64,000 nucleotides of DNA from positions 248,001 to 312,000 of IMG/VR virus record IMGVR_UViG_3300044680_000280; one strand, 5' to 3'. The notes beneath the pieces were generated by a model. That model did not search any database and was not told the origin of the DNA. It was given only the letters and a program-made list of their open reading frames with translations. The position numbers were made by a program, and so were the translations under genes. The stretch's first letter is position 1. Each line of letters starts with the position of its first letter. Positions 5,835-23,250 of the stretch are shown piece by piece.

Positions 5835-6136
5835 GGATCACACCGATTGAACCGGAGGCTCTACGGGGTCTTCCACGCACGATCTCGATGGGAGGAACGA
5901 AGCACGTCTCGGTCTACCACGGGACGCCCCTCGAGATGGTCCGCAGCATGGCTTCTGAGATGGGGTTGGGTACGGACGTACACGAAGCCGTCTCCACACT
6001 ACTAGACGCTCTGGGGCGCAACCGCGGCGTTCTGATCGCCATCCCTGAGGATGCTCCCGAGGACGTCGTCGCAACCCTCTTCGTTTACGCGCTCCTCGAC
6101 TCGGGTGTCTCTCGGGCGGTTACGGCTGAGAGCTGA
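5831..6136 (+). CDS. hypothetical protein
   Basis: ATGA overlap with upstream gene. Confidence 0.65.
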   Translation: MRITPIEPEALRGLPRTISMGGTKHVSVYHGTPLEMVRSMASEMGLGTDVHEAVSTLLDALGRNRGVLIAIPEDAPEDVVATLFVYALLDSGVSRAVTAES

Positions 6137-6749
6137 ACATTTTGAACGCCTGGGACTCTACAGGTCCCTCTGCGAGGTTTTCCTTGTACTTCCCAGTCTG
6201 TGAGTACAATTTTTCAACCTCACCCGAAATAGTGTGGAAACGAACCTGACCGATTCTCATGCCAGGGTATAGACGTACGGGGTAAGTGCAGGTAACCTCT
6301 AAAGTTAGCTGACCCGAAAACCCGGGGTCACAGAAGCCAGCGGTTTCATGGATGCTCACAAAAAGTCGCCCGATACTGCTCTTTCCGTCGAGCACGGGGA
6401 CAAACTCGTCGGTGCTGATCCGCTCCTTAGTGTGCATCAAGTAGCCGATCCCGGGTTTCAGGACCCAACCCTCGACTGGGTCGATCCTGAACCGACGGAT
6501 CTTGTTCGGCTTCCGAACGTCGAGGATGGCGGACTTAAAGCCATAGATGGGAACGAGGTTTCGACCGTCGGGGACCTCGTCAGCACCAGACGGAAGCGAG
6601 TAAGTTACAGCCTCGTACACCGCGACGTGCTCACCGAGGGTGACGTCGTAGCTCGTGGGGTTGACCTGGTCGGGGTCGAACGGGTCGATTTTGATACGAA
6701 ACTCGCTAATCGCGTTAAGAATGCCCCGATCGGAGAGAATGCCGTCCAT
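6120..6749 (-). CDS. dcd: dCTP deaminase
   Basis: QVNPTSYDVTLG, GKSSIGRL, AGFCDPGFSGQLTLE, GMRIGQ; start set at ATG 6749, 11 nt after GGTGTA. Confidence 0.92.
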   Translation of the reverse strand: MDGILSDRGILNAISEFRIKIDPFDPDQVNPTSYDVTLGEHVAVYEAVTYSLPSGADEVPDGRNLVPIYGFKSAILDVRKPNKIRRFRIDPVEGWVLKPGIGYLMHTKERISTDEFVPVLDGKSSIGRLFVSIHETAGFCDPGFSGQLTLEVTCTYPVRLYPGMRIGQVRFHTISGEVEKLYSQTGKYKENLAEGPVESQAFKMFSSQP

Positions 6750-6973
6750 GGTGTCCATACTACACCGCTCATCCCTCCCGACATGATCATATCCCACAGT
6801 ATCATGTTCGATTCCAGTGTCACCGCCCGGGTCTTTGTGAAGCGTTACTACCTCGAGCTGAGGCACCCGTGTCTGGTGGAGGACGAGGTGGTGCACATTG
6901 TGCTCCCAAAAAGTGACTTTGAGGCCGCGAGTTTACTTGCCGCCGACCTCAACGGGAGCATACTCTATGCAGA

Positions 6974-7492
6974 ATGGTAGATACGTTGTCATTACGTTAC
7001 TGGCCGGACCCGGTGCTGAACAAAAAGTGCGCTGAGGTTCCGGAGGTCACCGACGAGATCCGTGCCGTTGCCAAGGGCATGCTTGACATCATGTACAAGC
7101 AGGGCGGAATCGGTCTGGCGGCCCCGCAAGTCGGGCGACTCATCCGGATGATCGTCGTGGACGTTTGGTGGCCGAAAACGGGCGCGCGAAATCCCCGGGT
7201 CTTCATCAATCCACTACTGACACTGGGCGAGGAGAAGGAACGAGCTCGCGAGGGTTGTCTATCCCTCCCGGGTATCACGGACTTTGTCACGAGATCAAAG
7301 AGTGTTCAGGTTCACGCGCTGGATGAGCATGGCAAGCCCGTCATGCAACACGCGGACGGACTTCTTGCGGTTTGCCTCCAGCACGAGTGTGAGCACCTCG
7401 ACGGTATCACGCTTGTCGAGCACATGGGGCGGGCGAACCGTCGGATCCTAAAAAAGCAAATGCAGTCCAAGCGACCGCCCCGTCCGGTGTAA
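6974..7492 (+). CDS. def: peptide deformylase
   Basis: GIGLAAPQVG, EGCLS, QHECEHLDG motifs. Confidence 0.95.
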   Translation: MVDTLSLRYWPDPVLNKKCAEVPEVTDEIRAVAKGMLDIMYKQGGIGLAAPQVGRLIRMIVVDVWWPKTGARNPRVFINPLLTLGEEKERAREGCLSLPGITDFVTRSKSVQVHALDEHGKPVMQHADGLLAVCLQHECEHLDGITLVEHMGRANRRILKKQMQSKRPPRPV

Positions 7493-10984: not shown

Positions 10985-11238
10985 GGAGATCGCCATGAGG
11001 CCAGGAGAACCATGGCCTCATGAGTGGTCTTCTCCCTTACTAGAGCCATATCATACATAGCCTCTAAGGCGACGATTGCGGTTCCGCTGGCCAGGGCACC
11101 GTAGATACATTTGTCCAAAACATCGAGAATAGTTATCGCTTTTGGTGGAGATTCCCATTTTTCGATCAGAGGCTTTACGCTGGCATCCAATTGGGAGTCC
11201 GGAGCTCGCAGTAGCAGGGTCTTTAGTTGGTCAGACAT
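10969..11238 (-). CDS. hypothetical protein
   Basis: GGTGTA exactly 10 nt before ATG. Confidence 0.65.
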   Translation of the reverse strand: MSDQLKTLLLRAPDSQLDASVKPLIEKWESPPKAITILDVLDKCIYGALASGTAIVALEAMYDMALVREKTTHEAMVLLASWRSPQSSL

Positions 11239-11287
11239 ATGCCATTTTTACACCAACATGATTCACATGCCGGTGTATGTGCCGCGC

Positions 11288-13621
11288 ATGAACAGCTACC
11301 AGGTGAACCCAAACCTTTACCTCGTCGTGAATGAGGTAAGTAAGGCCCCAGCAACCAAGATCGTTGATGTCCCCGTCGACCATATTCTCGTGTACGACTG
11401 CTCGGGGAGTATGAGCTATGACTTACCGAAAATACGGGAGCAGGTGAAGAAGAAGCTTCCGAAGATGCTCGGGCCGAATGATCGCCTCAGCATAGTGTGG
11501 TTCTCGGGCCGCGTAGAGCACGGAATTCTCCTTGAAGCTGAACCGGTAGCGACGCTATCGGATCTCAAGACCATCGAGCAAACAATCGATCGGTGGCTTC
11601 GTCCTGTCGGGATGACGGGCTTCAAGGGGCCTCTCGAAGACGTGGTCGCGCTCGCGCAACGTTTGGAGAAGACGGGTGGTAATAGAGCACGGTCGATGAT
11701 GTTCTTTACCGACGGCTGTGACAACCAGTCCAGCCAGAACGAAGTTCTCAAAGCAGTTGAGAACGCGGGCATGCATGTACAATCGGCAACCTTCGTCGAA
11801 TATGGTTACTACGCCAACCGACCCCTGCTAGCCCAAATGGCTGAGAAGAGCGGCGGATCCCTTATCTTTGCCGAGACCTTCGACAAATACGAACCTCAGT
11901 TCGAGGCGTCCATCAAACGCAAGAGCACGAATGCCAAACGAATCGAGGTCACCCTCAAAGGTGACCCGGTCGGTGGGTTTGCCTACGCTCTCCAAGGTGG
12001 AGATCTCGTAACATTCGGTGTCGAGGGCGGAAAGATTTCCGTTCCAGAGGACCTCGGCCAATTCTACTACCTGTCTCCGTCATGCGTCGGAACTCTTGCT
12101 TCGGGTACAAGCATGAAGGGGCTCGACGCCACCCTTTCCGCTGTATACGCAGCGATCAGCCTCTTTTCCGTTCGCATGAAGCCTGACGTTGTGCTCCCCC
12201 TTCTCAAGGTGACGGGCGACGCGAGGTTCATCAAGGATTTCTCGACTTGCTTCGGCAAGCAGAAGTACAGCGCCTTCATGGACGCCACCAAGGCGGCGGC
12301 TTTCGATCGGGATCTGCGGTTGAAGGACGGGTACAACCCGAACCTCGTTCCGCCCGATGACGCGGTCACCGTTCTCGATGTACTCGAGACCCTTTATGAG
12401 GATGAGAGCGCGCGTATCCTCCTCAACGATATGACGTACACGAGCATCGGCCGGGGACGGCTCGACGCCACGGATCAGCTCACGGCGGAAGAGCAAACCC
12501 AAGTCGACACTCTCACCGAGGAGATGGGTAAGACCAAGGACGCGAAGAAGATTCGACTTCTTGCCCAGCAAATCGCCGACATCACTGACAAGCCGGAGGC
12601 CCTCAAGTTCAAACGGGAGGTACCGTCGTCGGGTCTGCCCATCAAGAACCTGACCTTCAACGAGGACCGTCCCAACGTAAGCTTCCTCGTTCAAATCCCG
12701 GGTACCATCGACCTTTCGAGTCGCATCGACAAGGCGACGATCGACTTGACGGGCGTCCCGACCATTTTCAAGTGCTTCCAGTTCCGAAACTATGCCGTCA
12801 TTAAGGATGGGCTCGTCAACATCGAGAAGCTCCCCGTCATCGTGTCCCAGAAGACCTTCGACAAGTTTTTGGCCGAGGGCGTCGTGACGAAGGAGGATGT
12901 TCTACGGCTCGAAACCGACGGGCACTCCGTCGGCTTGTGCATTAATCTCAAGTCCCTTCCCGTCATCAACCGCAAGATGGTGAAGGAGCTCAGCGCCAAG
13001 ACCTTCTTCGAGACCGCGTATGAGGTCACCAAGGCCAAGGCGGCGCAGAAGGTACTCAAGGACTATGCCAAGTCTCTCCTGCCGGAGAAGCAAAGCGTCG
13101 GCTATGCGGACAAATACGGCCAGGAGATCGCCGTGTGGCTCAAGGAGCAAGGGATCACGGACTACAACGGATTCCAGCCTCCCCATACGACGTCGGCGCC
13201 GACGACCGATGTATACACGGGTAAGGAACTGAAGGTCTCCCTCAAGGGACTCTCATCTCTGCCCAAGGTTGCCGAAGTGAAGGCGAAGATCCAAAAGGTG
13301 GGCTCCAAACTCAACGCCCCGTCCGCCCTCATGGCGGAGACGATCAAGGAAGTGGAGGCGTTCCTCTCAAGTGCCGTCTACTTGAAGGCGGCTGACCAGC
13401 CAGGGGTCCTCCAGGCGTGGCTCGACGGACAGACGAAGGCGTCGATCAGGAAGACCCGCGCGCTCATGCTCGACATGGCCAAGTTCACGTTTACGACCGT
13501 CGTCGGTCAAACCTGGTTCAAGGAGTTCTCCTCCGTGGACCAGACAGACATGACGATCACCGTGGACGGTAACGACATTCCGTGCAAGGTGGAAATGAAA
13601 GAGATTGAGATCAGGGTGTAG
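11288..13621 (+). CDS. large vWA-domain protein
   Basis: MIDAS DCSGSM and FFTDG; ATG 11288 is 10 nt after GGTGTA. Confidence 0.88.
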   Translation: MNSYQVNPNLYLVVNEVSKAPATKIVDVPVDHILVYDCSGSMSYDLPKIREQVKKKLPKMLGPNDRLSIVWFSGRVEHGILLEAEPVATLSDLKTIEQTIDRWLRPVGMTGFKGPLEDVVALAQRLEKTGGNRARSMMFFTDGCDNQSSQNEVLKAVENAGMHVQSATFVEYGYYANRPLLAQMAEKSGGSLIFAETFDKYEPQFEASIKRKSTNAKRIEVTLKGDPVGGFAYALQGGDLVTFGVEGGKISVPEDLGQFYYLSPSCVGTLASGTSMKGLDATLSAVYAAISLFSVRMKPDVVLPLLKVTGDARFIKDFSTCFGKQKYSAFMDATKAAAFDRDLRLKDGYNPNLVPPDDAVTVLDVLETLYEDESARILLNDMTYTSIGRGRLDATDQLTAEEQTQVDTLTEEMGKTKDAKKIRLLAQQIADITDKPEALKFKREVPSSGLPIKNLTFNEDRPNVSFLVQIPGTIDLSSRIDKATIDLTGVPTIFKCFQFRNYAVIKDGLVNIEKLPVIVSQKTFDKFLAEGVVTKEDVLRLETDGHSVGLCINLKSLPVINRKMVKELSAKTFFETAYEVTKAKAAQKVLKDYAKSLLPEKQSVGYADKYGQEIAVWLKEQGITDYNGFQPPHTTSAPTTDVYTGKELKVSLKGLSSLPKVAEVKAKIQKVGSKLNAPSALMAETIKEVEAFLSSAVYLKAADQPGVLQAWLDGQTKASIRKTRALMLDMAKFTFTTVVGQTWFKEFSSVDQTDMTITVDGNDIPCKVEMKEIEIRV

Positions 13622-14047: not shown

Positions 14048-14237
14048 GGGTTACCTCTCCTAAGGCGCTCATGCCACGAGCCCGGCTTCGCTGTCAAGAA
14101 CTCCGGCTCCTGGCTTCTGCACTTTCTATGCCCGCTCAACCATTCGGACCTGAACCGATTTCGTTCAAAAACTACCCCGGGTTGGTGTAAGAAGAACGTG
14201 GGGAGCAAGCTTTCCTGTAACCCCGGGAGATTTCAAC

Positions 14238-14897
14238 GTGGCTGAAAACAAAAAGGGTCTGTGGTCCTCCTTGAAGAGCCTTGCCATCGAGGACGTGCCC
14301 GACCCGTCGGCAAAGTCCGCGGTTCCTCTGATTCCAACGACACGTCCAAACCCCGGCGCCGTACCTCCCCCGTGGGTCGCTCCCCCGAGGATTGAAGTTT
14401 CGGTCGATCCGGCAACCTTATCGAAGATCGAGGGCAAACTCCAGGCCTCGACCCCTCCTGTTTATGCGGCGTTTATGGATCAGTTTCAGGCGCTCGAAGC
14501 CGTGATCCCCGACGAGGCAACGCGGTTCAAAGCGGCTCTTGTCGCCAGTCGTTCGTCCATCGAACAGATCTCGGGATCCATCGACCAGCTCCTTGTTGTC
14601 CTGGCGTCTCTGCTTGACGAGTTCAATCGGAAGTTCGAGGACAACCAGAGCAAAGCGGAAACTACAGCCAAGCAGCAGATGGAGGCTGACACGAAGCTCA
14701 TCGCCACTTGCGAGGAGCAACTCAAAGCCATCCAAGCTCAGATTGCTACCCTTCGCACGAAGGTCGACAGCGAACAAGCACAGGTTCAGGCGGAATCCGC
14801 TCGTCGAGAGGGCGTCCGCCAGTCGTTCAAAGCAGCATACGACCAGGTTTTCAATCGCCTCACCGCCCAAAAACAACGCATCTCACAGAGGGTCTAA
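14238..14897 (+). CDS. coiled-coil protein, first gene of ABC/OmpA operon
   Basis: Long helical C-terminal half; tight operon spacing. Confidence 0.75.
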   Translation: MAENKKGLWSSLKSLAIEDVPDPSAKSAVPLIPTTRPNPGAVPPPWVAPPRIEVSVDPATLSKIEGKLQASTPPVYAAFMDQFQALEAVIPDEATRFKAALVASRSSIEQISGSIDQLLVVLASLLDEFNRKFEDNQSKAETTAKQQMEADTKLIATCEEQLKAIQAQIATLRTKVDSEQAQVQAESARREGVRQSFKAAYDQVFNRLTAQKQRISQRV

Positions 14898-14900
14898 ATC

Positions 14901-15941
14901 ATGTCCGGCGAACTAGCTCAAGCCACGAAATCTTGGACGTCTCGTCCCGAAGGCAAAGTCGGCACCGTTTTCGGGTTTCTCCTCCTCGGCGGGGCGGCGA
15001 TTGCCGTTCTGTACTTCTGGGGACTCATTCTGCCTTGGCTGATCATGATGGCGGCGAACACGCTGACCCTGATCGGTCTCTGCGCGGCCATTGCGGGGAT
15101 TCTCTTCATCGTCTTCGACCCACGTTGGCGGAACCTCGCATGGTACGGCTACAAGTCGTTCATGCGAGGGCTCACCGGCATGTTCATCGAGCTCGACCCC
15201 ATCGGCATTCTGAAGAGCTACGTCACCAGCCTCAAAGACAAACTCGAGGAGATGGACAAGTCTCTTGCAAACCTCGACGGTCAACGGGGCAAGCTTCGGA
15301 AGCAGATCGCCGACAACGAGAAAGCCCGCGTCCACGCGCTCAAGATGATGGAAGTTGCCCGCGACCAAAAGCAGAACGCGGCGATGACCCTTCAAGGTCG
15401 CCAAGCGGAAAGACTCGCCCAGTCGAACGTCTCTTTGCAGGACCTTCTGACCCGAATGGATCGCCTTGCGACCGTGCTCGGCAAGATGCGGGAAGCCTCC
15501 GCCATCATGATCGAAGACATCACGAACGAGGTTGAGCTCAAGAGCCGGGAACGTGCCGCCCTCCTCGCCGGGTACAACGCCTTTTCCAAGGCTCGCAGCG
15601 TCATGAAGGGCGGCGGCGATGAAGCCGAGATCTTCAACATGACCATGGAGAAACTGACCGACGATTACGGCATGAAGATGGGTGAGATCGACAACTTCAT
15701 GAAGGTTTCTCAAGGATTCCTCGAGACCGTCGATCTCGAAAATGGCGTTGCCCAGAAGTCCGCAATCGAACAGCTCGAAGCGTGGGAAAATAAGAGTGCC
15801 AACATTCTTGGGCCGACGAACGGCACCGACGTCCACCTTCGAGTCGGCGATGCGGCACCCGCACTTCCGGCCAGCAGCGACGATTTCGCCGACCTCTTCA
15901 CCTCCGATCCCGCGACCCTTTCGGCTTCGGTCAAACGCTAA
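14901..15941 (+). CDS. membrane-anchored PspA/IM30-like coiled-coil protein
   Basis: Two N-terminal TM segments followed by a long coiled coil; PspA likeness is inferred. Confidence 0.6.
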   Translation: MSGELAQATKSWTSRPEGKVGTVFGFLLLGGAAIAVLYFWGLILPWLIMMAANTLTLIGLCAAIAGILFIVFDPRWRNLAWYGYKSFMRGLTGMFIELDPIGILKSYVTSLKDKLEEMDKSLANLDGQRGKLRKQIADNEKARVHALKMMEVARDQKQNAAMTLQGRQAERLAQSNVSLQDLLTRMDRLATVLGKMREASAIMIEDITNEVELKSRERAALLAGYNAFSKARSVMKGGGDEAEIFNMTMEKLTDDYGMKMGEIDNFMKVSQGFLETVDLENGVAQKSAIEQLEAWENKSANILGPTNGTDVHLRVGDAAPALPASSDDFADLFTSDPATLSASVKR

Positions 15942-15980
15942 CCGTGCAACTGAAACCAACCCACACAAGGATCTAAATCA

Positions 15981-17777
15981 ATGGCTACTCGTGTCAAACC
16001 GCTCCCGAAGATTCTCCTGGCACTCGCCCTCTTCGGCGGCCTCTTCTTCGTCTTTCACACCCTCGTCGCCAACGGCATCATCTCTCTGCCGGGAACCGCC
16101 GCCGAGGTTCCCAAGGTCGCCGCCGTTCCTACGGCGATTCCGACCGCAACGTCCGCTCCTCTTGTTCCCGCCGTGCCGATGCCGTCGGGCTCCGCCATCT
16201 CGAGCGGGACGAACATTCGAGCCTCCATGTGGGCATGGAACGCTCAAATGGGATTCATGTTCGCCAACGGCGGCCCCGATACGACGTCGGGCTCTCTCAT
16301 GGCCCAACACGGACTGAACGTCCACGTCAAGCGCGAGGACGACACGTCCAAGATGCAAGGAATGCTCATGGCTCTTGCCAAAGGCCTCAAGACCGACCCG
16401 AACACGTCCGCGGGTGTGCACTTCATCACGCTGATGGGCGATGGTACCGCGGCCTTCTTCGCCGCCGCCAACCCCGAGCTCAAGAAGATCTGCAAGGACT
16501 GCGAAGCCGAAGTCGTCGGTGTTCTCGGCTACTCGCGCGGTGAGGACAAGCTCATGGGTCCCGCCGAATGGAAGTCCAACCCGAAAGCCGCTCGCGGTCA
16601 CCTCATCGCGGGCGTCATCCGTGACGGAGACTGGAACGTTGCCATGAAGTGGGCGGGGGACAACGGACTGCTCAACAATCCCGACGAGACTACGTATGAC
16701 CCAGACGCACTGAACTGGCTCAACGCCGACACCTACATCGAGGCTGGGAACAAGTACATCTTGAACGTCTGTGAGCCTCGTCCCGTCGTCCACGGGGGCA
16801 AACGAACGGGCGAGACCAAGAGTGTCTGCGTCGACGGCGTCGTGACCTGGACTCCCGGAGACGTGAACGTGGCCCAAAAGAAGGGCGGTCTCGTTTCGAT
16901 CATCTCGACCAAGGAGTACAGTGGTCAAATGCCTTGCGCCCTTATTGGCATCAAGAAGTGGGACGTAGCCCACAAGACCGAGATCGAAGGCTTCCTGAAA
17001 GCCTCGTTCGATGGTGCGGATCAAGTTCGCCAATACCCGAGCGCCCTGCACAAGGCCGCGGAAATCAGCGCAGCGGTCTACGCAGACCCGGAAGCCAACG
17101 CCGATTACTGGGAGAAGTACTACAAGGGCACGTTAGAGACCGACCGTCAGGGCGTGAAAGTCTCTCTCGGTGGATCGTCCGTCTCCAATCTCGCTGACAA
17201 CCTCCAGATCTTCGGGCTCGCCCCGGGTTCCGCCAACCTTTACGAAGCCACCTACGTGACGTTCGGGGACATCGTGGTGCAGCAGTACCCGAAGCTCGTG
17301 CCGAACTACCCCAAGGTGACCGACGTCGTAAACGTGTCGTTCGTTCAGGATCTCGCAAATTCCGCTCCCCCTTCCCCCGCCGCAACCGCCGAACACAACA
17401 CCTTCGTTGCCGGCGCCCCGGTCGAAACGGTCTCCAAGAAATCGTGGTCGATCAACTTCGAAACGGGTAAAGCAACATTCACGCCAGACGCGATGAAAAC
17501 CCTCACGCAACTCGAGCGCGAACTCGTCATCACTGACCTCGCCATCGAAGTCGACGGTCATACGGACAACACGGGTGACCCATCATTCAATCAGACCCTC
17601 TCGAAGCAGCGCGCGGCGGCTGTTCAGACCTGGCTCTCACAGCAGTCCAGCGCGAACTTCCCACCCGAGCGATTCACCGTTCAAGGCTACGGAGATTCCA
17701 AGCCTATCGCAACGAACTCGACGCCCGTTGGTCAAGCAAAGAACCGTCGAGTCGACGTCGTCCTCGGTCAGCAGTAA
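15981..17777 (+). CDS. ABC substrate-binding (NMT1/TauA-like) domain fused to OmpA-C domain
   Basis: N-terminal anchor; GYSRGEDK...VTWTPGD core; C-terminal VDGHTDN...LSKQRAAAV...GYGDSKP...NRRVDV. Confidence 0.85.
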
Positions 17778-17849
17778 TCAGCAGTTCCAAAGCAGATTCT
17801 GGGGTCTCAGTTTCCATATTGAGGCCCCAGCTCTTTTAATGAGGGTACC

Positions 17850-18638
17850 ATGAACAGACACGACTTGTCCGAAGCTCTCAAACCGAACGGCCATGTGTCA
17901 TCCAGAGCCACCACGATCCTTTTCGTCGGCACCCTCGTGGCCCTCATCGGGGCCTGGTTCGCTCGACCCGACTTCATTCCCGGTCCCGTCGAGGTGGCTC
18001 AAGCGTATCCCCGACTGTTCGATCAGGGTCTCTTCTATCAGCTCTACATCAGCCTCTCGACAAACCTTCAAGCCATCGCCCTCTCCTGCTTCTTTACGAT
18101 TCCGTTGGCGTACTTGAGCGTTCTTCCCGTCATGCGGCCCCTCGTCCACATGCTTTGCAAAGGACGGTTCCTCGGTGTCACCGGGTTCGTCATCCTCTTC
18201 ACCATCTTCTTCGGCGGTGGACACGCGCTGAAGGTCGCTTTGCTCGTCTTTGGAATGAGCTTGTTTCTCGTGACATCTCTTTTTGACATCGTCGAGAGCA
18301 TCCCCCGAGAGGAGTTTGACCACACCCGAACGCTCCGCATGGGGGACTGGGGCTCGGTGATCGAGGTGGTTATCCTAGGAAGGTTCGACCAGGTTCTCGA
18401 CGCCATCCGTCAGAACGCTGCCATGGGTTGGGTCATGTTGACCATGGTGGAGGGACTCGTCCGGTTCGAAGGAGGACTGGGGGCTCTCATGCTGGCTGAG
18501 GACAAGCATATCAAACTGGACGCCGTCTTCGCCGTTCAAATCATCGTTCTGGTCATCGGTATCCTTCAGGACGTCGCCCTCCGTGCCATACGGCACCTTC
18601 TTTGCCCCTATGCCGAACTATCCCTCGAAAGGCATTAG
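17850..18638 (+). CDS. ABC transporter permease (TauC/SsuC-like)
   Basis: Multiple TM helices; EAA-like loop; WVMLTMVEGL...GGLG. Confidence 0.85.
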   Translation: MNRHDLSEALKPNGHVSSRATTILFVGTLVALIGAWFARPDFIPGPVEVAQAYPRLFDQGLFYQLYISLSTNLQAIALSCFFTIPLAYLSVLPVMRPLVHMLCKGRFLGVTGFVILFTIFFGGGHALKVALLVFGMSLFLVTSLFDIVESIPREEFDHTRTLRMGDWGSVIEVVILGRFDQVLDAIRQNAAMGWVMLTMVEGLVRFEGGLGALMLAEDKHIKLDAVFAVQIIVLVIGILQDVALRAIRHLLCPYAELSLERH

Positions 18639-18640
18639 AC

Positions 18641-18862
18641 ATGAATCCCCTCAAACAACGAGAACAAATCCTCGTCGACTTTCTCTGTTTCATGCTGTTT
18701 GGACTCGTACTGTTCTTATTCGGAGGAGTCCCCCTTGTTCGTATGATTGGTGCCACGATCATCGCAAGCACCATCATCATTCACGGGTATGTCCAAATGC
18801 GGCTCTGCCAACAGATTGAGAAAGACGGTTACGATTCAGTAACCGGGGAGAAGAAGTCGTGA
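18641..18862 (+). CDS. small two-TM membrane protein
   Basis: Two hydrophobic segments; sits between permease and ATPase. Confidence 0.6.
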   Translation: MNPLKQREQILVDFLCFMLFGLVLFLFGGVPLVRMIGATIIASTIIIHGYVQMRLCQQIEKDGYDSVTGEKKS

Positions 18863-19680
18863 GTCAGGTCTGTGAACGCAAAGAAGTTCTCGTCAAGCTC
18901 GACAACATCTCCCTATCCTTTGACGGGCGGCCGGTTCTCTCCGACATCAACGCGGAAGTTCGGGACATCGTTCGTCCAGGTTGCGTGACGGGTCAGGTCG
19001 TAGGAATCCTCGGCCCGAGCGGTGTGGGAAAAACTCAGCTCTCGCGAATCATGACTGGACTCATGGAGCCAACGACGGGCGCCGTACGAGTCGGCGTCAG
19101 GCTCGAACCGATCCACGCTGGACTTGTTGGCTACGTTGCCCAGAACTACCCTCTTCTCCGTCACCGGACCGTGCTCGGGAATCTCATGGTTGCCGCTCGT
19201 CGTTCGGGCCTGAGCTCCGACGGGGCAAAGGATAAGGCGATGGGATACCTCGGCATGTTTGGACTCCAAGACAAGTGGGACGCTTATCCCGCTCAGTTAT
19301 CGGGTGGACAGCGCCAACGAATCGCCATTGCCCAGCAGCTTCTATGCTCGGAGCACTTCCTCATTCTGGATGAGCCAACAACGGGACTCGATCCCATCAT
19401 GAAGGACAAGGTCTGCGGTTTCATTCGTCAGGTTGCCAGCCTCTACGAGGAGAACACGATCTTCGTCATCACTCACGACATCTCGGCGATCCTCACGATT
19501 GCTGACACACTTTGGGTCCTCGGGCGCCGTAAGGACGCGGCGGGCAACGCCATCGGGGCGACCATCGTCAAGACTTACGACCTCATCGAACGTGGCATCG
19601 CCTGGGAAACGGACGTCGCCACCACCCCGCAGTACCGCGACGCTCAACGAGAGATTCGATCTCTATTTGAGACCCTCTAG
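18859..19680 (+). CDS. ABC transporter ATP-binding protein (TauB/SsuB-like)
   Basis: Walker A GPSGVGKT, LSGGQ, Walker B LILDEP, H-loop THD. Confidence 0.95.
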   Translation: MSQVCERKEVLVKLDNISLSFDGRPVLSDINAEVRDIVRPGCVTGQVVGILGPSGVGKTQLSRIMTGLMEPTTGAVRVGVRLEPIHAGLVGYVAQNYPLLRHRTVLGNLMVAARRSGLSSDGAKDKAMGYLGMFGLQDKWDAYPAQLSGGQRQRIAIAQQLLCSEHFLILDEPTTGLDPIMKDKVCGFIRQVASLYEENTIFVITHDISAILTIADTLWVLGRRKDAAGNAIGATIVKTYDLIERGIAWETDVATTPQYRDAQREIRSLFETL

Positions 19681-22418: not shown

Positions 22419-22464
22419 ACTCTTGACAATTACACCGGTTCTCTACTTGTGCCCTCACTCGAGT

Positions 22465-23250
22465 ATGACAACGACTCGCAAAGTTCAACGCTACGGATGG
22501 GTCCCCGACCTTCCGGACCATCGAGACCATCTCTACGCCGCTCCCAGCCCCGTGCTAGCGGCCCTTCCCCCGTCAGTCGACCTTCGCCCCAACTGCCCCG
22601 CCGTCTACGACCAAGGTCAATTGGGAAGCTGCACCGCTAATGCAATCGGTGCTGCGTTCGAGTTCGACCAGATCAAGGAAAAACTTCCTCATGTCTGGAG
22701 GCCATCGCGCCTGTTCATTTACTACAACGAGCGTTCCATCGAGGGCACCGTGTCGCAGGACGCAGGAGCTCAAATTCGAGACGGCATCAAAAGCGTTGCG
22801 TCCCAGGGCGCTTGCTCCGAAGACCTCTGGCCGTACGACATCACGAAGTTTGCGGATCAGCCACCGGCGGACACCTACACGAACGCCTCGAAGCATCTCG
22901 TGACGAGCTACCAGTCGGTTGCTCAGGACGCGCAACAGATCAAGGGCTGCCTCGCCTCGGGTTACCCCGTAGTTTTCGGCTTCACGGTCTACTCGGACTT
23001 CGAGTCTCAGCAGGTTGCATCGACCGGCGTCGTCAACATGCCGACCTCGAGTGAAACGGTCGTCGGTGGTCACGCGGTTCTCTGCGTTGGCTACGACGAC
23101 TCGACGAGCCAGTTCATCGTTCGCAATTCTTGGGGCAACGGGTGGGGTCTCAACGGGTACTTCCTCTTCCCGTACCAGTATCTCCTCAGTTCGAGCCTCG
23201 CGTCCGACCTGTGGACCGTTAGATTCGTACAGGGTACACCGAACTCGTAA
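22465..23250 (+). CDS. papain-family (C1A) cysteine protease
   Basis: YDQGQLGSCTANA (Gln/Cys), GGHAV (His), IVRNSWG (Asn); N-terminal YGWVPDLPDHRD. Confidence 0.95.
   Translation: MTTTRKVQRYGWVPDLPDHRDHLYAAPSPVLAALPPSVDLRPNCPAVYDQGQLGSCTANAIGAAFEFDQIKEKLPHVWRPSRLFIYYNERSIEGTVSQDAGAQIRDGIKSVASQGACSEDLWPYDITKFADQPPADTYTNASKHLVTSYQSVAQDAQQIKGCLASGYPVVFGFTVYSDFESQQVASTGVVNMPTSSETVVGGHAVLCVGYDDSTSQFIVRNSWGNGWGLNGYFLFPYQYLLSSSLASDLWTVRFVQGTPNS

What the first reader, a model, noticed from the sequence alone, without database searches (positions are those of the whole stretch)
14184..19680. Complete phage-borne envelope operon: coiled-coil, PspA-like protein, SBP-OmpA fusion and ABC importer
Six tightly packed co-oriented genes follow a GGTGTA at 14184. 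A TauA/NMT1-like binding domain is fused to a peptidoglycan-binding OmpA-C domain and sits with a TauBC-like permease/ATPase and a membrane-anchored PspA-like protein. A full importer with membrane-remodelling partners is unusual cargo for a phage, and the substrate is unknown. Inference: nutrient scavenging, membrane-potential maintenance during infection, or superinfection exclusion.
Basis: partly seen in the sequence, partly recalled or inferred. Interest (0 to 1): 0.6.

Follow-up and report, generated by a model that had tools for sequence, protein, structure and literature searches.

The report
Huge-phage PspA-like plus tethered ABC importer cassette
A roughly 460-kb peat phage carries a six-gene membrane module: a divergent PspA-like protein, a coiled-coil partner, and an ABC importer whose binding protein is tied to both the inner membrane and the cell wall. 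The module recurs in many large phages and a few bacteria, has been noted twice in surveys, and has no known substrate or role.

Summary
Six co-oriented, tightly packed genes lie at 14238-19680, on a contig that also carries a portal gene, a tail-fibre gene and 38 tRNAs.

- **g3:** an AlphaFold model (pLDDT 92) shows an N-terminal membrane helix, a TauA/NrtA/CmpA-class binding domain (VIA Z 28 to TauA) and an OmpA-like peptidoglycan-binding domain.
- **g4 and g5:** g4 is an NrtB/CmpB/TauC-type permease. g5 is an ABC ATPase with all its motifs intact.
- **g2:** it has a two-helix membrane hairpin and a helical hairpin. Vipp1/PspA are its best structural matches and it aligns in register with PspA (HHalign 78%). 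The protein itself fails Pfam PspA_IM30, so I call it a probable divergent member.
- **g1:** an uncharacterised coiled-coil protein.

The cassette is not unusual among large phages. The five conserved genes g1-g5 occur in about 40 IMG/VR contigs and in the AT-rich 462-kb phage LR756500.1. Bacteria mostly carry only g3-g4-g5, and rarely (5 of 301 Acidobacteriota sampled). Ravi et al. 2024 described the operon type in bacteria. Yuan and Chen 2026 reported PspA next to complete ABC transporters in 15 huge phages.

Substrate and function remain unknown. I rate it a new member of a known kind, of moderate interest.

The parts
14184..14189 (+). GGTGTA motif, 54 nt upstream of g1
   Evidence: Read directly from the sequence. 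Genome-wide, 44% of the 327 copies sit 15-18 nt before an ATG that opens an ORF, against a median of 6% for permuted hexamers. This copy is not at that spacing, so it may be a promoter element or may be chance.
14238..14897 (+). g1: 219-aa soluble coiled-coil protein with a Pro-rich N-terminus and no assignable family
   Evidence: Only generic coiled-coil Pfam hits. No hydrophobic segment. A profile finds it directly upstream of g2 in most viral loci. HHalign against PspA and against g2 was not significant. The ESM Atlas returns only 'hypothetical protein' clusters.
14901..15941 (+). g2: 346-aa protein with a membrane hairpin (about aa 18-76), a divergent PspA/Vipp1-like helical hairpin (about aa 95-238) and a low-confidence C-terminus
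   Evidence: AF2 model with pLDDT above 90 over aa 100-230. The Foldseek top 10 are all Vipp1/PspA (best E 1.6e-3; 6zvs_A TMt 0.81). VIA ranks Vipp1 (Z 12.3) and PspA (Z 12.2) first and second. HHalign against bacterial PspA gives prob 78%, E 1.7e-5, aligned at the DP start of helix alpha1. PF04012 hits 11 of 46 family members but not this protein. Hydrophobic segments.
15981..17777 (+). g3: 598-aa protein with an N-terminal membrane helix (aa 5-36), a TauA/NrtA/CmpA-class binding domain (about aa 74-470) and an OmpA-like peptidoglycan-binding domain (about aa 482-598)
   Evidence: AF2 pLDDT 92.3, pTM 0.89. VIA: TauA 6ssy Z 28.1 (rmsd 2.8, 290 aligned), CmpA Z 24.8, NrtA Z 24.1, SsuA Z 23; TagL/OmpA-C Z 18.4. 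Foldseek agrees. Pfam OmpA E 7.6e-19. The OmpA D529, N537, L540 and R544 are invariant across 75 homologues. The binding domain has no Pfam or PDB sequence match.
17799..17830 (+). 13-bp hairpin followed by a T-rich tail, between the binding-protein gene and the permease gene
   Evidence: Terminator-like scan. RNA fold of 17778-17849 gives -26.1 kcal/mol, z -3.6, with 0 of 200 shuffles as stable. Inferred to be an attenuator or mRNA stabiliser that gives an excess of g3, as in other binding-protein-dependent operons (my own knowledge).
17850..18638 (+). g4: 262-aa type I ABC importer permease of the NrtB/CmpB/TauC/SsuC kind
   Evidence: The family profile hits CmpB 9u9z at E 1.4e-8 and NrtB 8w9m at 3.4e-4. 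NCBIfam: SaoP 6e-10, TauC 7e-8, SsuC 9e-5, all far below cut-off. An EAA-like loop starts at aa 154 and there are several hydrophobic segments. The homologue in L148 carries PF00528.
18641..18862 (+). g4b: 73-aa small membrane protein; a variable insert, not part of the conserved core
   Evidence: Called by both gene callers. Hydrophobic over aa 7-48. tblastn finds no homologue in any related locus. Phage versions often carry unrelated small ORFs in the g3/g4 and g4/g5 gaps, whereas bacterial versions are tight.
18859..19680 (+). g5: 273-aa ABC ATPase with intact catalytic motifs
   Evidence: Pfam ABC_tran E 1.2e-24. phrog_293 E 9e-50. Walker A at aa 52, LSGGQ at 147, Walker B plus Glu at 167-172, H-loop at 204.

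Best explanation
This is a mobile envelope module carried by a huge phage from peat (contig 463,523 bp).

**Core transporter (shown).** The core is a type I ABC importer of the nitrate/bicarbonate/taurine/sulfonate (NitT/TauT) kind: permease g4 and ATPase g5. Its binding protein g3 is not free in the periplasm. An N-terminal helix holds it in the inner membrane and a C-terminal OmpA-like domain holds it on peptidoglycan.

**Upstream pair (shown as anatomy).** In phages the importer is almost always preceded by two genes. One is a soluble coiled-coil protein (g1). The other (g2) has a two-helix membrane hairpin that carries a cytoplasmic helical hairpin of the PspA/Vipp1/ESCRT-III type.

**Mechanism (inferred).** During the long infection of a large phage, the cassette is expressed from the phage genome. 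g3-g4-g5 import a small polar or charged solute at sites fixed to the wall. The invariant cleft-lining positions are rich in Asp, Glu, Trp, Tyr and Asn, which fits a cationic or amino-bearing ligand such as an aminoalkyl-sulfonate or -phosphonate, a polyamine or an amino sugar. g2, probably with g1, polymerises on the inner membrane to keep it sealed and energised.

**Status of the steps.** Gene content, folds, motifs, topology logic, conservation and phage setting are shown. Import direction, ligand class, membrane protection and cooperation between the two halves are inferred.
For: - **Anatomy and folds:**
- **Trio conservation:** g3-g4-g5 is adjacent in nearly all of the 127 related loci analysed (g4 found in 120 and g5 in 118 of the 128 loci with a g3 match, LR756500.1 included).
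- **Upstream pair:** g2 is directly upstream in 41 of 47 viral loci, and g1 upstream of that in 37. The same order occurs in the AT-rich phage LR756500.1.
- **Real cellular system:** the cassette sits in a 6.6-Mb Acidobacteriota contig between mreBCD and surA-like genes, and in a 4.86-Mb Chthonomonadaceae chromosome.
- **Selection on both domains of g3:** 37 invariant positions across 75 homologues lie at strand ends and helix starts of the binding domain and in the OmpA peptidoglycan motif.
- **ATPase:** all motifs are intact.
- **Operon signals:** SD-like words precede each gene, and there is a hairpin after g3.
- **Phage setting:**
- **Prior comparative-genomic notes of the same association:** PMC11237479 section 18 and bioRxiv 10.64898/2026.10.24.761521.
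Against: - There are no expression data; only DNA runs from peat hold the sequence.
- No ligand can be derived. The binding domain has no sequence match to any solved binding protein, and I could not map residues on coordinates.
- The window's g2 has no PF04012 hit, and its structural Z scores are barely above those of generic helical hairpins.
- Most bacterial copies lack g1 and g2, so the two halves need not work together.
- The g1-g2 complex prediction gave no verdict.
Confidence: 0.5

Rival explanations
1. The ABC system is not a nutrient importer but an envelope tether or sensor. The membrane- and wall-anchored g3 reports a wall- or periplasm-derived ligand, or mechanically couples the inner membrane to peptidoglycan. 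ATP hydrolysis by g5 changes that link, and the PspA-like g2 is the effector on the cytoplasmic face.
For: - The double anchoring of g3 is odd for a scavenging binding protein.
- g2 is strictly adjacent to g3 in phages.
- The invariant acidic and aromatic cleft positions would also suit amino sugars or muropeptides.
- Ravi et al. likewise link membrane remodelling with this transporter.
Against: - g4 is a standard type I importer permease with an EAA-like loop, related to CmpB/NrtB.
- Known mechanotransducing ABC systems such as FtsEX, LolCDE and MacB use a different permease fold (my own knowledge).
- Bacteria mostly keep the trio without g2.
Confidence: 0.15
2. The cassette is chiefly a counter-defence or exclusion device. 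The PspA-like polymer repairs inner-membrane lesions made by host abortive-infection pore formers or by the phage's own envelope proteins, or the wall-tethered complex blocks entry of competing phages. The transporter part is secondary.
For: - The g1-g2 pair is nearly universal in phage copies but present in only about a quarter of the bacterial genome loci fetched.
- PspA genes are widespread in large phages, in several different membrane-protein neighbourhoods.
Against: - There is no padloc or defence evidence; I did not scan that library.
- g3-g4-g5 are the most conserved genes of the module, at 35-70% identity across phages against 22-55% for g2, which does not fit a secondary role.
Confidence: 0.15
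3. g2 is not a PspA/ESCRT-III homologue at all. It is an unrelated membrane-anchored coiled-coil protein whose long helical hairpin merely looks like one.
For: - No Pfam hit for the window protein.
- The best Foldseek E is only 1.6e-3.
- VIA Z of 12 lies within the range the tool gives for generic helical models, and unrelated hairpins score Z 11.
- Thermoanaerobaculia place an unrelated protein, with a membrane hairpin plus helical region, at the analogous position.
Against: - Four independent lines put PspA/Vipp1 first: Pfam tallies over homologues (11 of 46, best 3.9e-5), Foldseek, VIA and ESM Atlas structure clusters (TM 0.52/0.66).
- HHalign aligns the conserved DP start of helix alpha1 in register.
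Confidence: 0.2
4. The region is host chromosome inside a mis-called provirus, not phage DNA.
For: - IMG/VR labels the record 'provirus' and trimmed a 463,523-bp contig to 406,734 bp.
- Pfam terminase, sheath and T4 capsid models found nothing.
Against: - The window lies 248-312 kb into the record.
- The contig carries a portal gene (E 5e-25), a tail-fibre gene, 38 tRNAs in one array, and a run of giant minus-strand genes.
- The gene next door is phrog_2426, E 9e-180, present in 504 phage records.
- The flanks are syntenic with another 363-kb viral contig.
- True bacterial copies have housekeeping flanks instead.
Confidence: 0.03

Closest known systems
PspA - (SIG+PBPb+OmpA) - permease - ABC ATPase operons noted by Ravi et al., mSystems 2024 (PMC11237479; example OGG56892.1, Candidatus Handelsmanbacteria)
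   Same: The order and domain content match: a PspA-like gene, then a signal/TM-anchored solute-binding plus OmpA protein, then a TM permease, then an ABC ATPase.
   Different: The published example continues with a TM+Snf7 protein and a double AAA+ ATPase. Neither is present next to the window's cassette. Here a coiled-coil gene (g1) precedes the PspA-like gene, and the PspA-like protein itself carries the membrane hairpin. The published note covers bacteria only and is one sentence of comparative genomics.
Phage-encoded PspA next to complete ABC transporters (Yuan and Chen, bioRxiv 10.64898/2026.10.24.761521)
   Same: They report huge phages, including soil ones, that carry pspA adjacent to a binding protein, a permease and an ATPase (15 of 189 loci).
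   Different: The preprint does not describe the OmpA fusion, the coiled-coil partner, the binding-protein family or the bacterial counterparts. I could not check whether this contig is among their 15.
TauABC / SsuABC / NrtABCD / CmpABCD importers (NitT and TauT families)
   Same: g3's binding-domain fold matches TauA (Z 28.1), CmpA (24.8), NrtA (24.1) and SsuA (23). The permease profile hits CmpB and NrtB. The ATPase is standard.
   Different: There is no sequence-level match of the binding domain to any of them, and no Pfam NMT1 hit for the window protein. The binding protein is membrane-anchored and fused to an OmpA-like domain. The cleft-lining invariant residues are acidic and aromatic, which is not obviously what anion binders need (inference).
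PspA / Vipp1 (IM30), bacterial ESCRT-III superfamily
   Same: g2 has a long alpha1-alpha2/3 hairpin, the conserved DP at the start of alpha1, and best structural matches to Vipp1 and PspA.
   Different: The amphipathic helix alpha0 is replaced by a two-helix transmembrane hairpin. g2 is below the Pfam threshold. No PspB/C/F partner is seen in the flanks. Canonical PspA genes sit elsewhere in the bacterial genomes that carry the cassette.

Membership tests
Type I ABC importer, NitT/TauT kind (TauABC, SsuABC, NrtABCD, CmpABCD) | Class II periplasmic binding protein of the NrtA/TauA/SsuA structural group | tested here: met
   AF2 model with pLDDT 92.3. VIA Z is 28.1 to TauA (290 of 297 residues, rmsd 2.8) and 24-25 to CmpA/NrtA. 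Foldseek E is 7e-11 to 9e-11.
Type I ABC importer, NitT/TauT kind (TauABC, SsuABC, NrtABCD, CmpABCD) | BPD_transp_1-type permease with an EAA loop | tested here: met
   The profile of 56 homologues hits CmpB at 1.4e-8 and NrtB at 3.4e-4. An EAA-like stretch starts at aa 154. A homologue carries PF00528. The window protein itself has no Pfam hit.
Type I ABC importer, NitT/TauT kind (TauABC, SsuABC, NrtABCD, CmpABCD) | ABC ATPase with Walker A, Q-loop, LSGGQ, Walker B-Glu and H-loop | tested here: met
   PF00005 E 1.2e-24. All motifs were located.
Type I ABC importer, NitT/TauT kind (TauABC, SsuABC, NrtABCD, CmpABCD) | Sequence membership of the binding protein (Pfam NMT1/NMT1_2, or equivalog models for TauA/SsuA/NrtA) | tested here: not met
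   There is no Pfam or NCBIfam hit outside the OmpA domain for the window protein. NMT1 is weak in 9 of 75 homologues (best 0.0044). The PDB profile search found nothing significant.
Type I ABC importer, NitT/TauT kind (TauABC, SsuABC, NrtABCD, CmpABCD) | Transported substrate (anion, sulfonate or pyrimidine) | not testable with these tools
   This needs ligand-binding or uptake assays.
OmpA-C-like peptidoglycan-binding domain (PF00691) | Pfam score above the gathering cut-off, and conserved Asp/Arg of the DAP-binding site | tested here: met
   68.3 bits against a cut-off of 27.2. D529, N537, L540, S541 and R544 are invariant or nearly so. TagL is Z 18.4, rmsd 1.2, 43% identity.
PspA/IM30/Vipp1 (ESCRT-III superfamily) | PF04012 match above the gathering score | tested here: not met
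   No hit at E <= 1 for the window protein or anywhere in the phage genome. 11 of 46 homologues hit weakly (best 3.9e-5).
PspA/IM30/Vipp1 (ESCRT-III superfamily) | alpha1-alpha2/3 helical hairpin of the ESCRT-III fold, aligned in register with PspA | tested here: inconclusive
   The Foldseek top 10 are all Vipp1/PspA, but the best E is 1.6e-3. VIA Z 12.3 and 12.2 rank first and second, but generic hairpins reach Z 11. HHalign gives prob 78% over 61 columns. Atlas PspA clusters give TM 0.52/0.66.
PspA/IM30/Vipp1 (ESCRT-III superfamily) | N-terminal amphipathic helix alpha0 for peripheral membrane binding | tested here: not met
   The N-terminus is about 50 residues of continuous hydrophobic sequence (aa 18-76), read as a two-helix transmembrane hairpin.
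PspA/IM30/Vipp1 (ESCRT-III superfamily) | Self-assembly into rings or rods and membrane protection | not testable with these tools
   This needs purification with EM, and physiology.
PspA-PBPb/OmpA-ABC operon class of Ravi et al. 2024 | PspA-like gene adjacent to an anchored PBPb+OmpA protein, a permease and an ABC ATPase | tested here: met
PspA-PBPb/OmpA-ABC operon class of Ravi et al. 2024 | Downstream TM+Snf7 protein and double AAA+ ATPase | tested here: not met
   The genes downstream of g5 are a 99-aa ORF, NT5C, a 234-aa ORF and an HNH endonuclease. No AAA+ or Snf7 Pfam hit lies within 10 kb.

The most novel reading that the evidence does not exclude
The five-gene form (coiled-coil, membrane-anchored ESCRT-III-like protein, wall-tethered binding protein, permease, ATPase) may be one machine that originated, or is chiefly maintained, in huge phages. 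In this reading the transporter is not a scavenger. It senses or moves a wall- or periplasm-derived cationic ligand and so directs an ESCRT-III-like polymer to keep the host inner membrane intact through a long infection, or against membrane-targeting abortive-infection effectors. The rare bacterial five-gene copies would then be captures from phages.
Probability: 0.15. Interest if true: 0.7.

Novelty: new member of a known kind. Interest (0 to 1): 0.42.

Why it matters
Large phages are increasingly seen to manipulate the host envelope. This cassette is one of the most conserved such modules in soil and freshwater huge phages, and nobody knows what it transports or why it is coupled to a PspA-like protein.

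It offers a compact, testable system for two open questions. The first is what bacterial ESCRT-III-like proteins do when they are hard-wired to the membrane and to a transporter. The second is what a binding protein gains from being tied to peptidoglycan.

The practical value of this report is the clean anatomy, the split between the three-gene bacterial form and the five-gene form that dominates in phages, and the pointer to prior literature.

Tried and rejected
- **Near-identical phage records.** Megablast of the region against GenBank phages found no match.
- **Phage hallmark genes by Pfam.** Terminase_6N, Terminase_6C, Phage_sheath_1 and Gp23 gave nothing in the phage genome.
- **Serratia phage phiMAM1 proteins.** tblastn of 21 phiMAM1 proteins matched only the VWA protein and, weakly, a clamp loader. 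The phage is therefore not an Ackermannviridae relative.
- **PHROGs on 20 large ORFs.** Most are orphans. Only the portal, tail fibre, helicases and a methyltransferase were named.
- **Binding domain against PDB sequences.** A sequence profile of the binding domain alone gave no usable match, so no ligand-residue transfer was possible.
- **g1 against PspA and g2.** HHalign was not significant.
- **Thermoanaerobaculia protein.** The 320-420-aa protein at the analogous position showed no homology to g2 or PspA.
- **Complex prediction of g2 (90-310) with g1 (55-219).** The result was 'no answer' with score 0.00, which is evidence neither for nor against binding.
- **RNA evidence.** Only three peat metagenome DNA runs hold the stretch.
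- **Not done.** The padloc library was not scanned.

Full report
**1. The observation**

The + strand between 14238 and 19680 carries six ORFs of 219, 346, 598, 262, 73 and 273 codons. The gaps between them are 3, 39, 72, 2 and -4 nt. Gene callers on two independent assemblies of this sequence, a 463,523-bp JGI contig and a 52-kb Logan contig, call exactly the same six genes. GGTGTA is at 14184-14189, 54 nt before g1's GTG. The description is therefore accurate.

**2. Phage or host?**

The window is bases 248,001-312,000 of a 406,734-bp IMG/VR record. The record is labelled 'provirus', has a CheckV completeness of 85%, and was trimmed from the 463,523-bp contig.

Evidence that it is phage DNA:
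- The same record has a portal gene (phrog_16240, E 5e-25), a tail-fibre gene, DnaB-like and other helicases, and a run of giant minus-strand genes of up to 2,706 codons.
- It has 38 tRNA genes, 37 of them packed into 28 kb just upstream of the window.
- The gene immediately upstream of the cassette (11111-13621, VWA-like) matches phrog_2426 at E 9e-180 and is found in 504 phage records.
- The flanks hold a NinI-like phosphatase, a 5'-nucleotidase, an HNH endonuclease, a dCTP deaminase, a peptide deformylase and many orphan ORFs.
- The flanks are syntenic with a 363-kb viral contig, L008.

Pfam terminase, sheath and T4-capsid models found nothing. Only the VWA protein and, weakly, a clamp loader match the Ackermannviridae phage phiMAM1, so this is a novel lineage. 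The source is peat.

**3. What the genes are**

*g3 (15981-17777).* With a 75-sequence alignment, AlphaFold gave pLDDT 92.3 and pTM 0.89.
- Residues 5-36 are a single hydrophobic helix preceded by Arg and Lys, which implies N-in, C-out.
- Residues about 74-470 superpose on TauA (VIA Z 28.1, rmsd 2.8, 290 of 297 residues), CmpA (24.8), NrtA (24.1), SsuA (23), and ThiY and Thi5 (Foldseek E about 1e-10).
- Residues about 482-598 are an OmpA-like domain (Pfam E 7.6e-19; TagL Z 18.4, 43% identity). The peptidoglycan-binding Asp and Arg are invariant.
- By sequence the binding domain is a family of its own. It has no Pfam hit, only weak NMT1 hits in 9 of 75 homologues, and no PDB sequence match.

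*g4 (17850-18638).* A profile of 56 homologues hits the bicarbonate and nitrate permeases CmpB (1.4e-8) and NrtB (3.4e-4). NCBIfam gives weak SaoP, TauC and SsuC hits. An EAA-like loop starts at residue 154. A Sphingobacteriales homologue carries PF00528.

*g5 (18859-19680).* It is an ABC ATPase with Walker A, LSGGQ, Walker B-Glu and H-loop all intact.

*g2 (14901-15941).* It has about 50 continuous hydrophobic residues (18-76), read as a two-helix hairpin. A long helical hairpin follows, modelled with pLDDT above 90 over residues 100-230. The lines of evidence on PspA are these:
- The Foldseek top ten are all Vipp1/PspA (best E 1.6e-3; TMt up to 0.81).
- An exhaustive VIA search ranks Vipp1 (Z 12.3) and E. 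coli PspA (Z 12.2) first and second, but unrelated hairpins follow at Z 11.
- Pfam PspA_IM30 is the family most often hit among 46 homologues (11 hits, best 3.9e-5), yet it does not hit the window protein.
- HHalign against canonical PspA from five cassette-bearing bacterial genomes gives 78% probability, aligning the DP start of helix alpha1 in register.
- ESM Atlas structure clusters agree.

I read g2 as a probable, divergent PspA/ESCRT-III superfamily member in which a transmembrane hairpin replaces helix alpha0.

*g1 (14238-14897).* It is a soluble coiled-coil protein with a Pro-rich N-terminus. No family can be assigned.

*g4b (18641-18862).* It is a small membrane protein with no homologue in any related locus.

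**4. Distribution**

- g3 has thousands of metagenomic relatives, many of them on contigs of 200-620 kb.
- A pattern scan found 47 IMG/VR loci and 362 places in species-representative genomes, of which 80 were fetched.
- g3-g4-g5 are adjacent in nearly all of these loci.
- With profiles, g2 is found directly upstream of g3 in 41 of 47 viral loci, and g1 upstream of g2 in 37. The AT-rich 462-kb phage LR756500.1 has the same order.
- Among the 80 genome loci, only about a quarter have g1-g2.

The bacterial copies divide as follows:
- The Armatimonadota, Thermoanaerobaculia, Bryobacterales and Saprospiraceae clades carry the trio alone.
- These are real chromosomal genes. A Chthonomonadaceae 4.86-Mb chromosome has the trio beside catalase, efp and accBC. 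A 6.6-Mb Acidobacteriota contig has the five-gene form between mreBCD/thrC and a surA-like gene, next to a faint transposase-like hit.
- The system is rare in bacteria, found in 5 of 301 evenly sampled Acidobacteriota genomes.

On a g3 tree, viral and genomic rows interleave, needing at least 6-7 changes of label. Trio-only clades are almost purely bacterial and follow taxonomy. The window's protein sits in an all-viral clade of eight (support 99). One clade of near-identical five-gene copies is labelled with several different phyla, which suggests phage contigs binned into MAGs.

In phages the gaps between g3, g4 and g5 often hold unrelated small ORFs. g4b is one of these. Bacterial copies are tight.

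**5. Signals**

Each cassette gene has a purine-rich SD-like word 6-10 nt before its start. A perfect 13-bp hairpin with a T-rich tail lies between g3 and g4 (-26 kcal/mol, z -3.6). This is the position where binding-protein operons commonly attenuate transcription (my own knowledge).

GGTGTA is a genuine signal of this phage. It has 327 copies against about 199 expected. In 44% of them an ATG that opens an ORF lies 15-18 nt downstream, against 6% for permuted words and 7-9% for canonical SD words. The copy at 14184 is 54 nt from g1, so it is not at the usual spacing. It could still be a promoter element, but that is unproven and no RNA data exist.

**6. How it most likely works**

Shown:
- a complete type I importer of the NitT/TauT kind;
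- a binding protein fixed to the inner membrane and, through an intact OmpA-like domain, to peptidoglycan;
- a membrane-anchored PspA-like protein and a coiled-coil protein that travel with the importer in phages.

Inferred:
- The transporter imports a small polar or charged solute.
- The invariant residues of the binding domain lie at strand ends and helix starts, where class II binding proteins line their cleft. Many of them are Asp, Glu, Trp, Tyr or Asn.
- TauA, which binds an aminoalkyl-sulfonate, is the best structural match. I therefore favour a ligand bearing an amine, but this is a lead, not a result.
- g2, possibly with g1, would stabilise the inner membrane.

Whether the two halves cooperate is unknown. 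The g1-g2 complex job gave no verdict.

**7. Comparison with what is known**

Ravi et al. 2024 (PMC11237479, section 18 and Table S3) list an operon in a Handelsmanbacteria genome with this order: PspA, SIG+PBPb+OmpA, TM permease, ABC ATPase, TM+Snf7, double AAA+. They propose a link between membrane remodelling and solute transport. Yuan and Chen 2026 found 189 pspA genes in 184 huge phages, 15 of them next to complete ABC transporters.

The window's cassette is of this kind. It lacks the Snf7 and AAA+ genes and adds g1.

What appears new here:
- the fold-level assignment of the binding protein and the permease;
- the split between the three-gene bacterial form and the five-gene form that dominates in phages;
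- the rarity of the system in bacteria;
- the breadth across phages of very different base composition.

**8. Verdict**

The novelty is modest because the association has been noticed before, and the function is still open. I rate it a new member of a known kind, with interest about 0.4.

Noticed in passing
whole phage genome; in the window e.g. 19983 (+) before ATG 19999, 19973 (-) before ATG 19962, 22273 (-) before ATG 22261: GGTGTA, often with C or T before it, lies 16-17 nt before the ATG of about 145 ORFs. That is 44% of all 327 copies, against a median of 6% for permuted hexamers and 7-9% for canonical Shine-Dalgarno words. It looks like a phage-specific promoter or a non-SD translation signal. 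The cassette genes use SD-like words instead.
   Followed up: partly
G000 218,179-246,034 (ends about 2 kb upstream of the window start): There is an array of 37 tRNA genes on one strand covering nearly all amino acids, plus one more at 164,951.
   Followed up: no
window 17799-17830: A perfect 13-bp hairpin with a T-rich tail lies between the binding-protein gene and the permease gene. It is terminator- or attenuator-like. Conservation in related loci was not checked.
   Followed up: partly
window 11111-13621: An 836-aa VWA-like protein matches phrog_2426 at E 9e-180. It is shared at about 34% identity with 504 phage records (Ackermannviridae, Rhizobium phages and others), although, of the 21 phiMAM1 proteins tried, only a clamp loader also matched, and only weakly.
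   Followed up: partly
loci L078, L092, L098, L110, L118 (GTDB genome contigs): Near-identical five-gene cassettes sit in MAGs assigned to Acidobacteriota, Vulcanimicrobiota, Chloroflexota, Saccharimonadota and Verrucomicrobiota. The most likely reason is phage or mobile contigs mis-binned into MAGs.
   Followed up: no
loci L052, L054, L058, L059, L062, L068, L069, L102 (Thermoanaerobaculia and relatives): The gene order is different (permease, ATPase, X, binding protein). X is a 320-420-aa protein with an N-terminal membrane hairpin and a helical C-terminal part. Its architecture is analogous to g2 but it has no detectable homology to g2 or PspA.
   Followed up: partly
L148 5108-13623 (Sphingobacteriales, 2.98-Mb scaffold): This is a bacterial five-gene copy with two tandem 339-aa genes at the g2 position and a family-2 glycosyltransferase inserted between the permease and the ATPase.
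   Followed up: no
viral loci L003-L047, gaps between g3/g4 and g4/g5: Phage copies of the operon are often interrupted by unrelated small ORFs, many of them hydrophobic. The median gaps are 224 and 164 nt, against 116 and 34 nt in bacterial genomes, and reach up to 4 kb. g4b of the window is one such insert.
   Followed up: partly
G000 record as a whole: IMG/VR classes the record as 'provirus' and holds 406,734 of the 463,523 bases of the JGI contig. The gene content seen (portal, tail fibre, tRNA array, giant genes) fits a free huge phage better than an integrated element.
   Followed up: partly
window 6974-7492 and about 6120-6760 and 22423-23250: The cassette's neighbourhood holds a peptide deformylase, a dCTP deaminase and a papain-like (Peptidase_C1) gene, which are further host-like auxiliary genes.
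   Followed up: no
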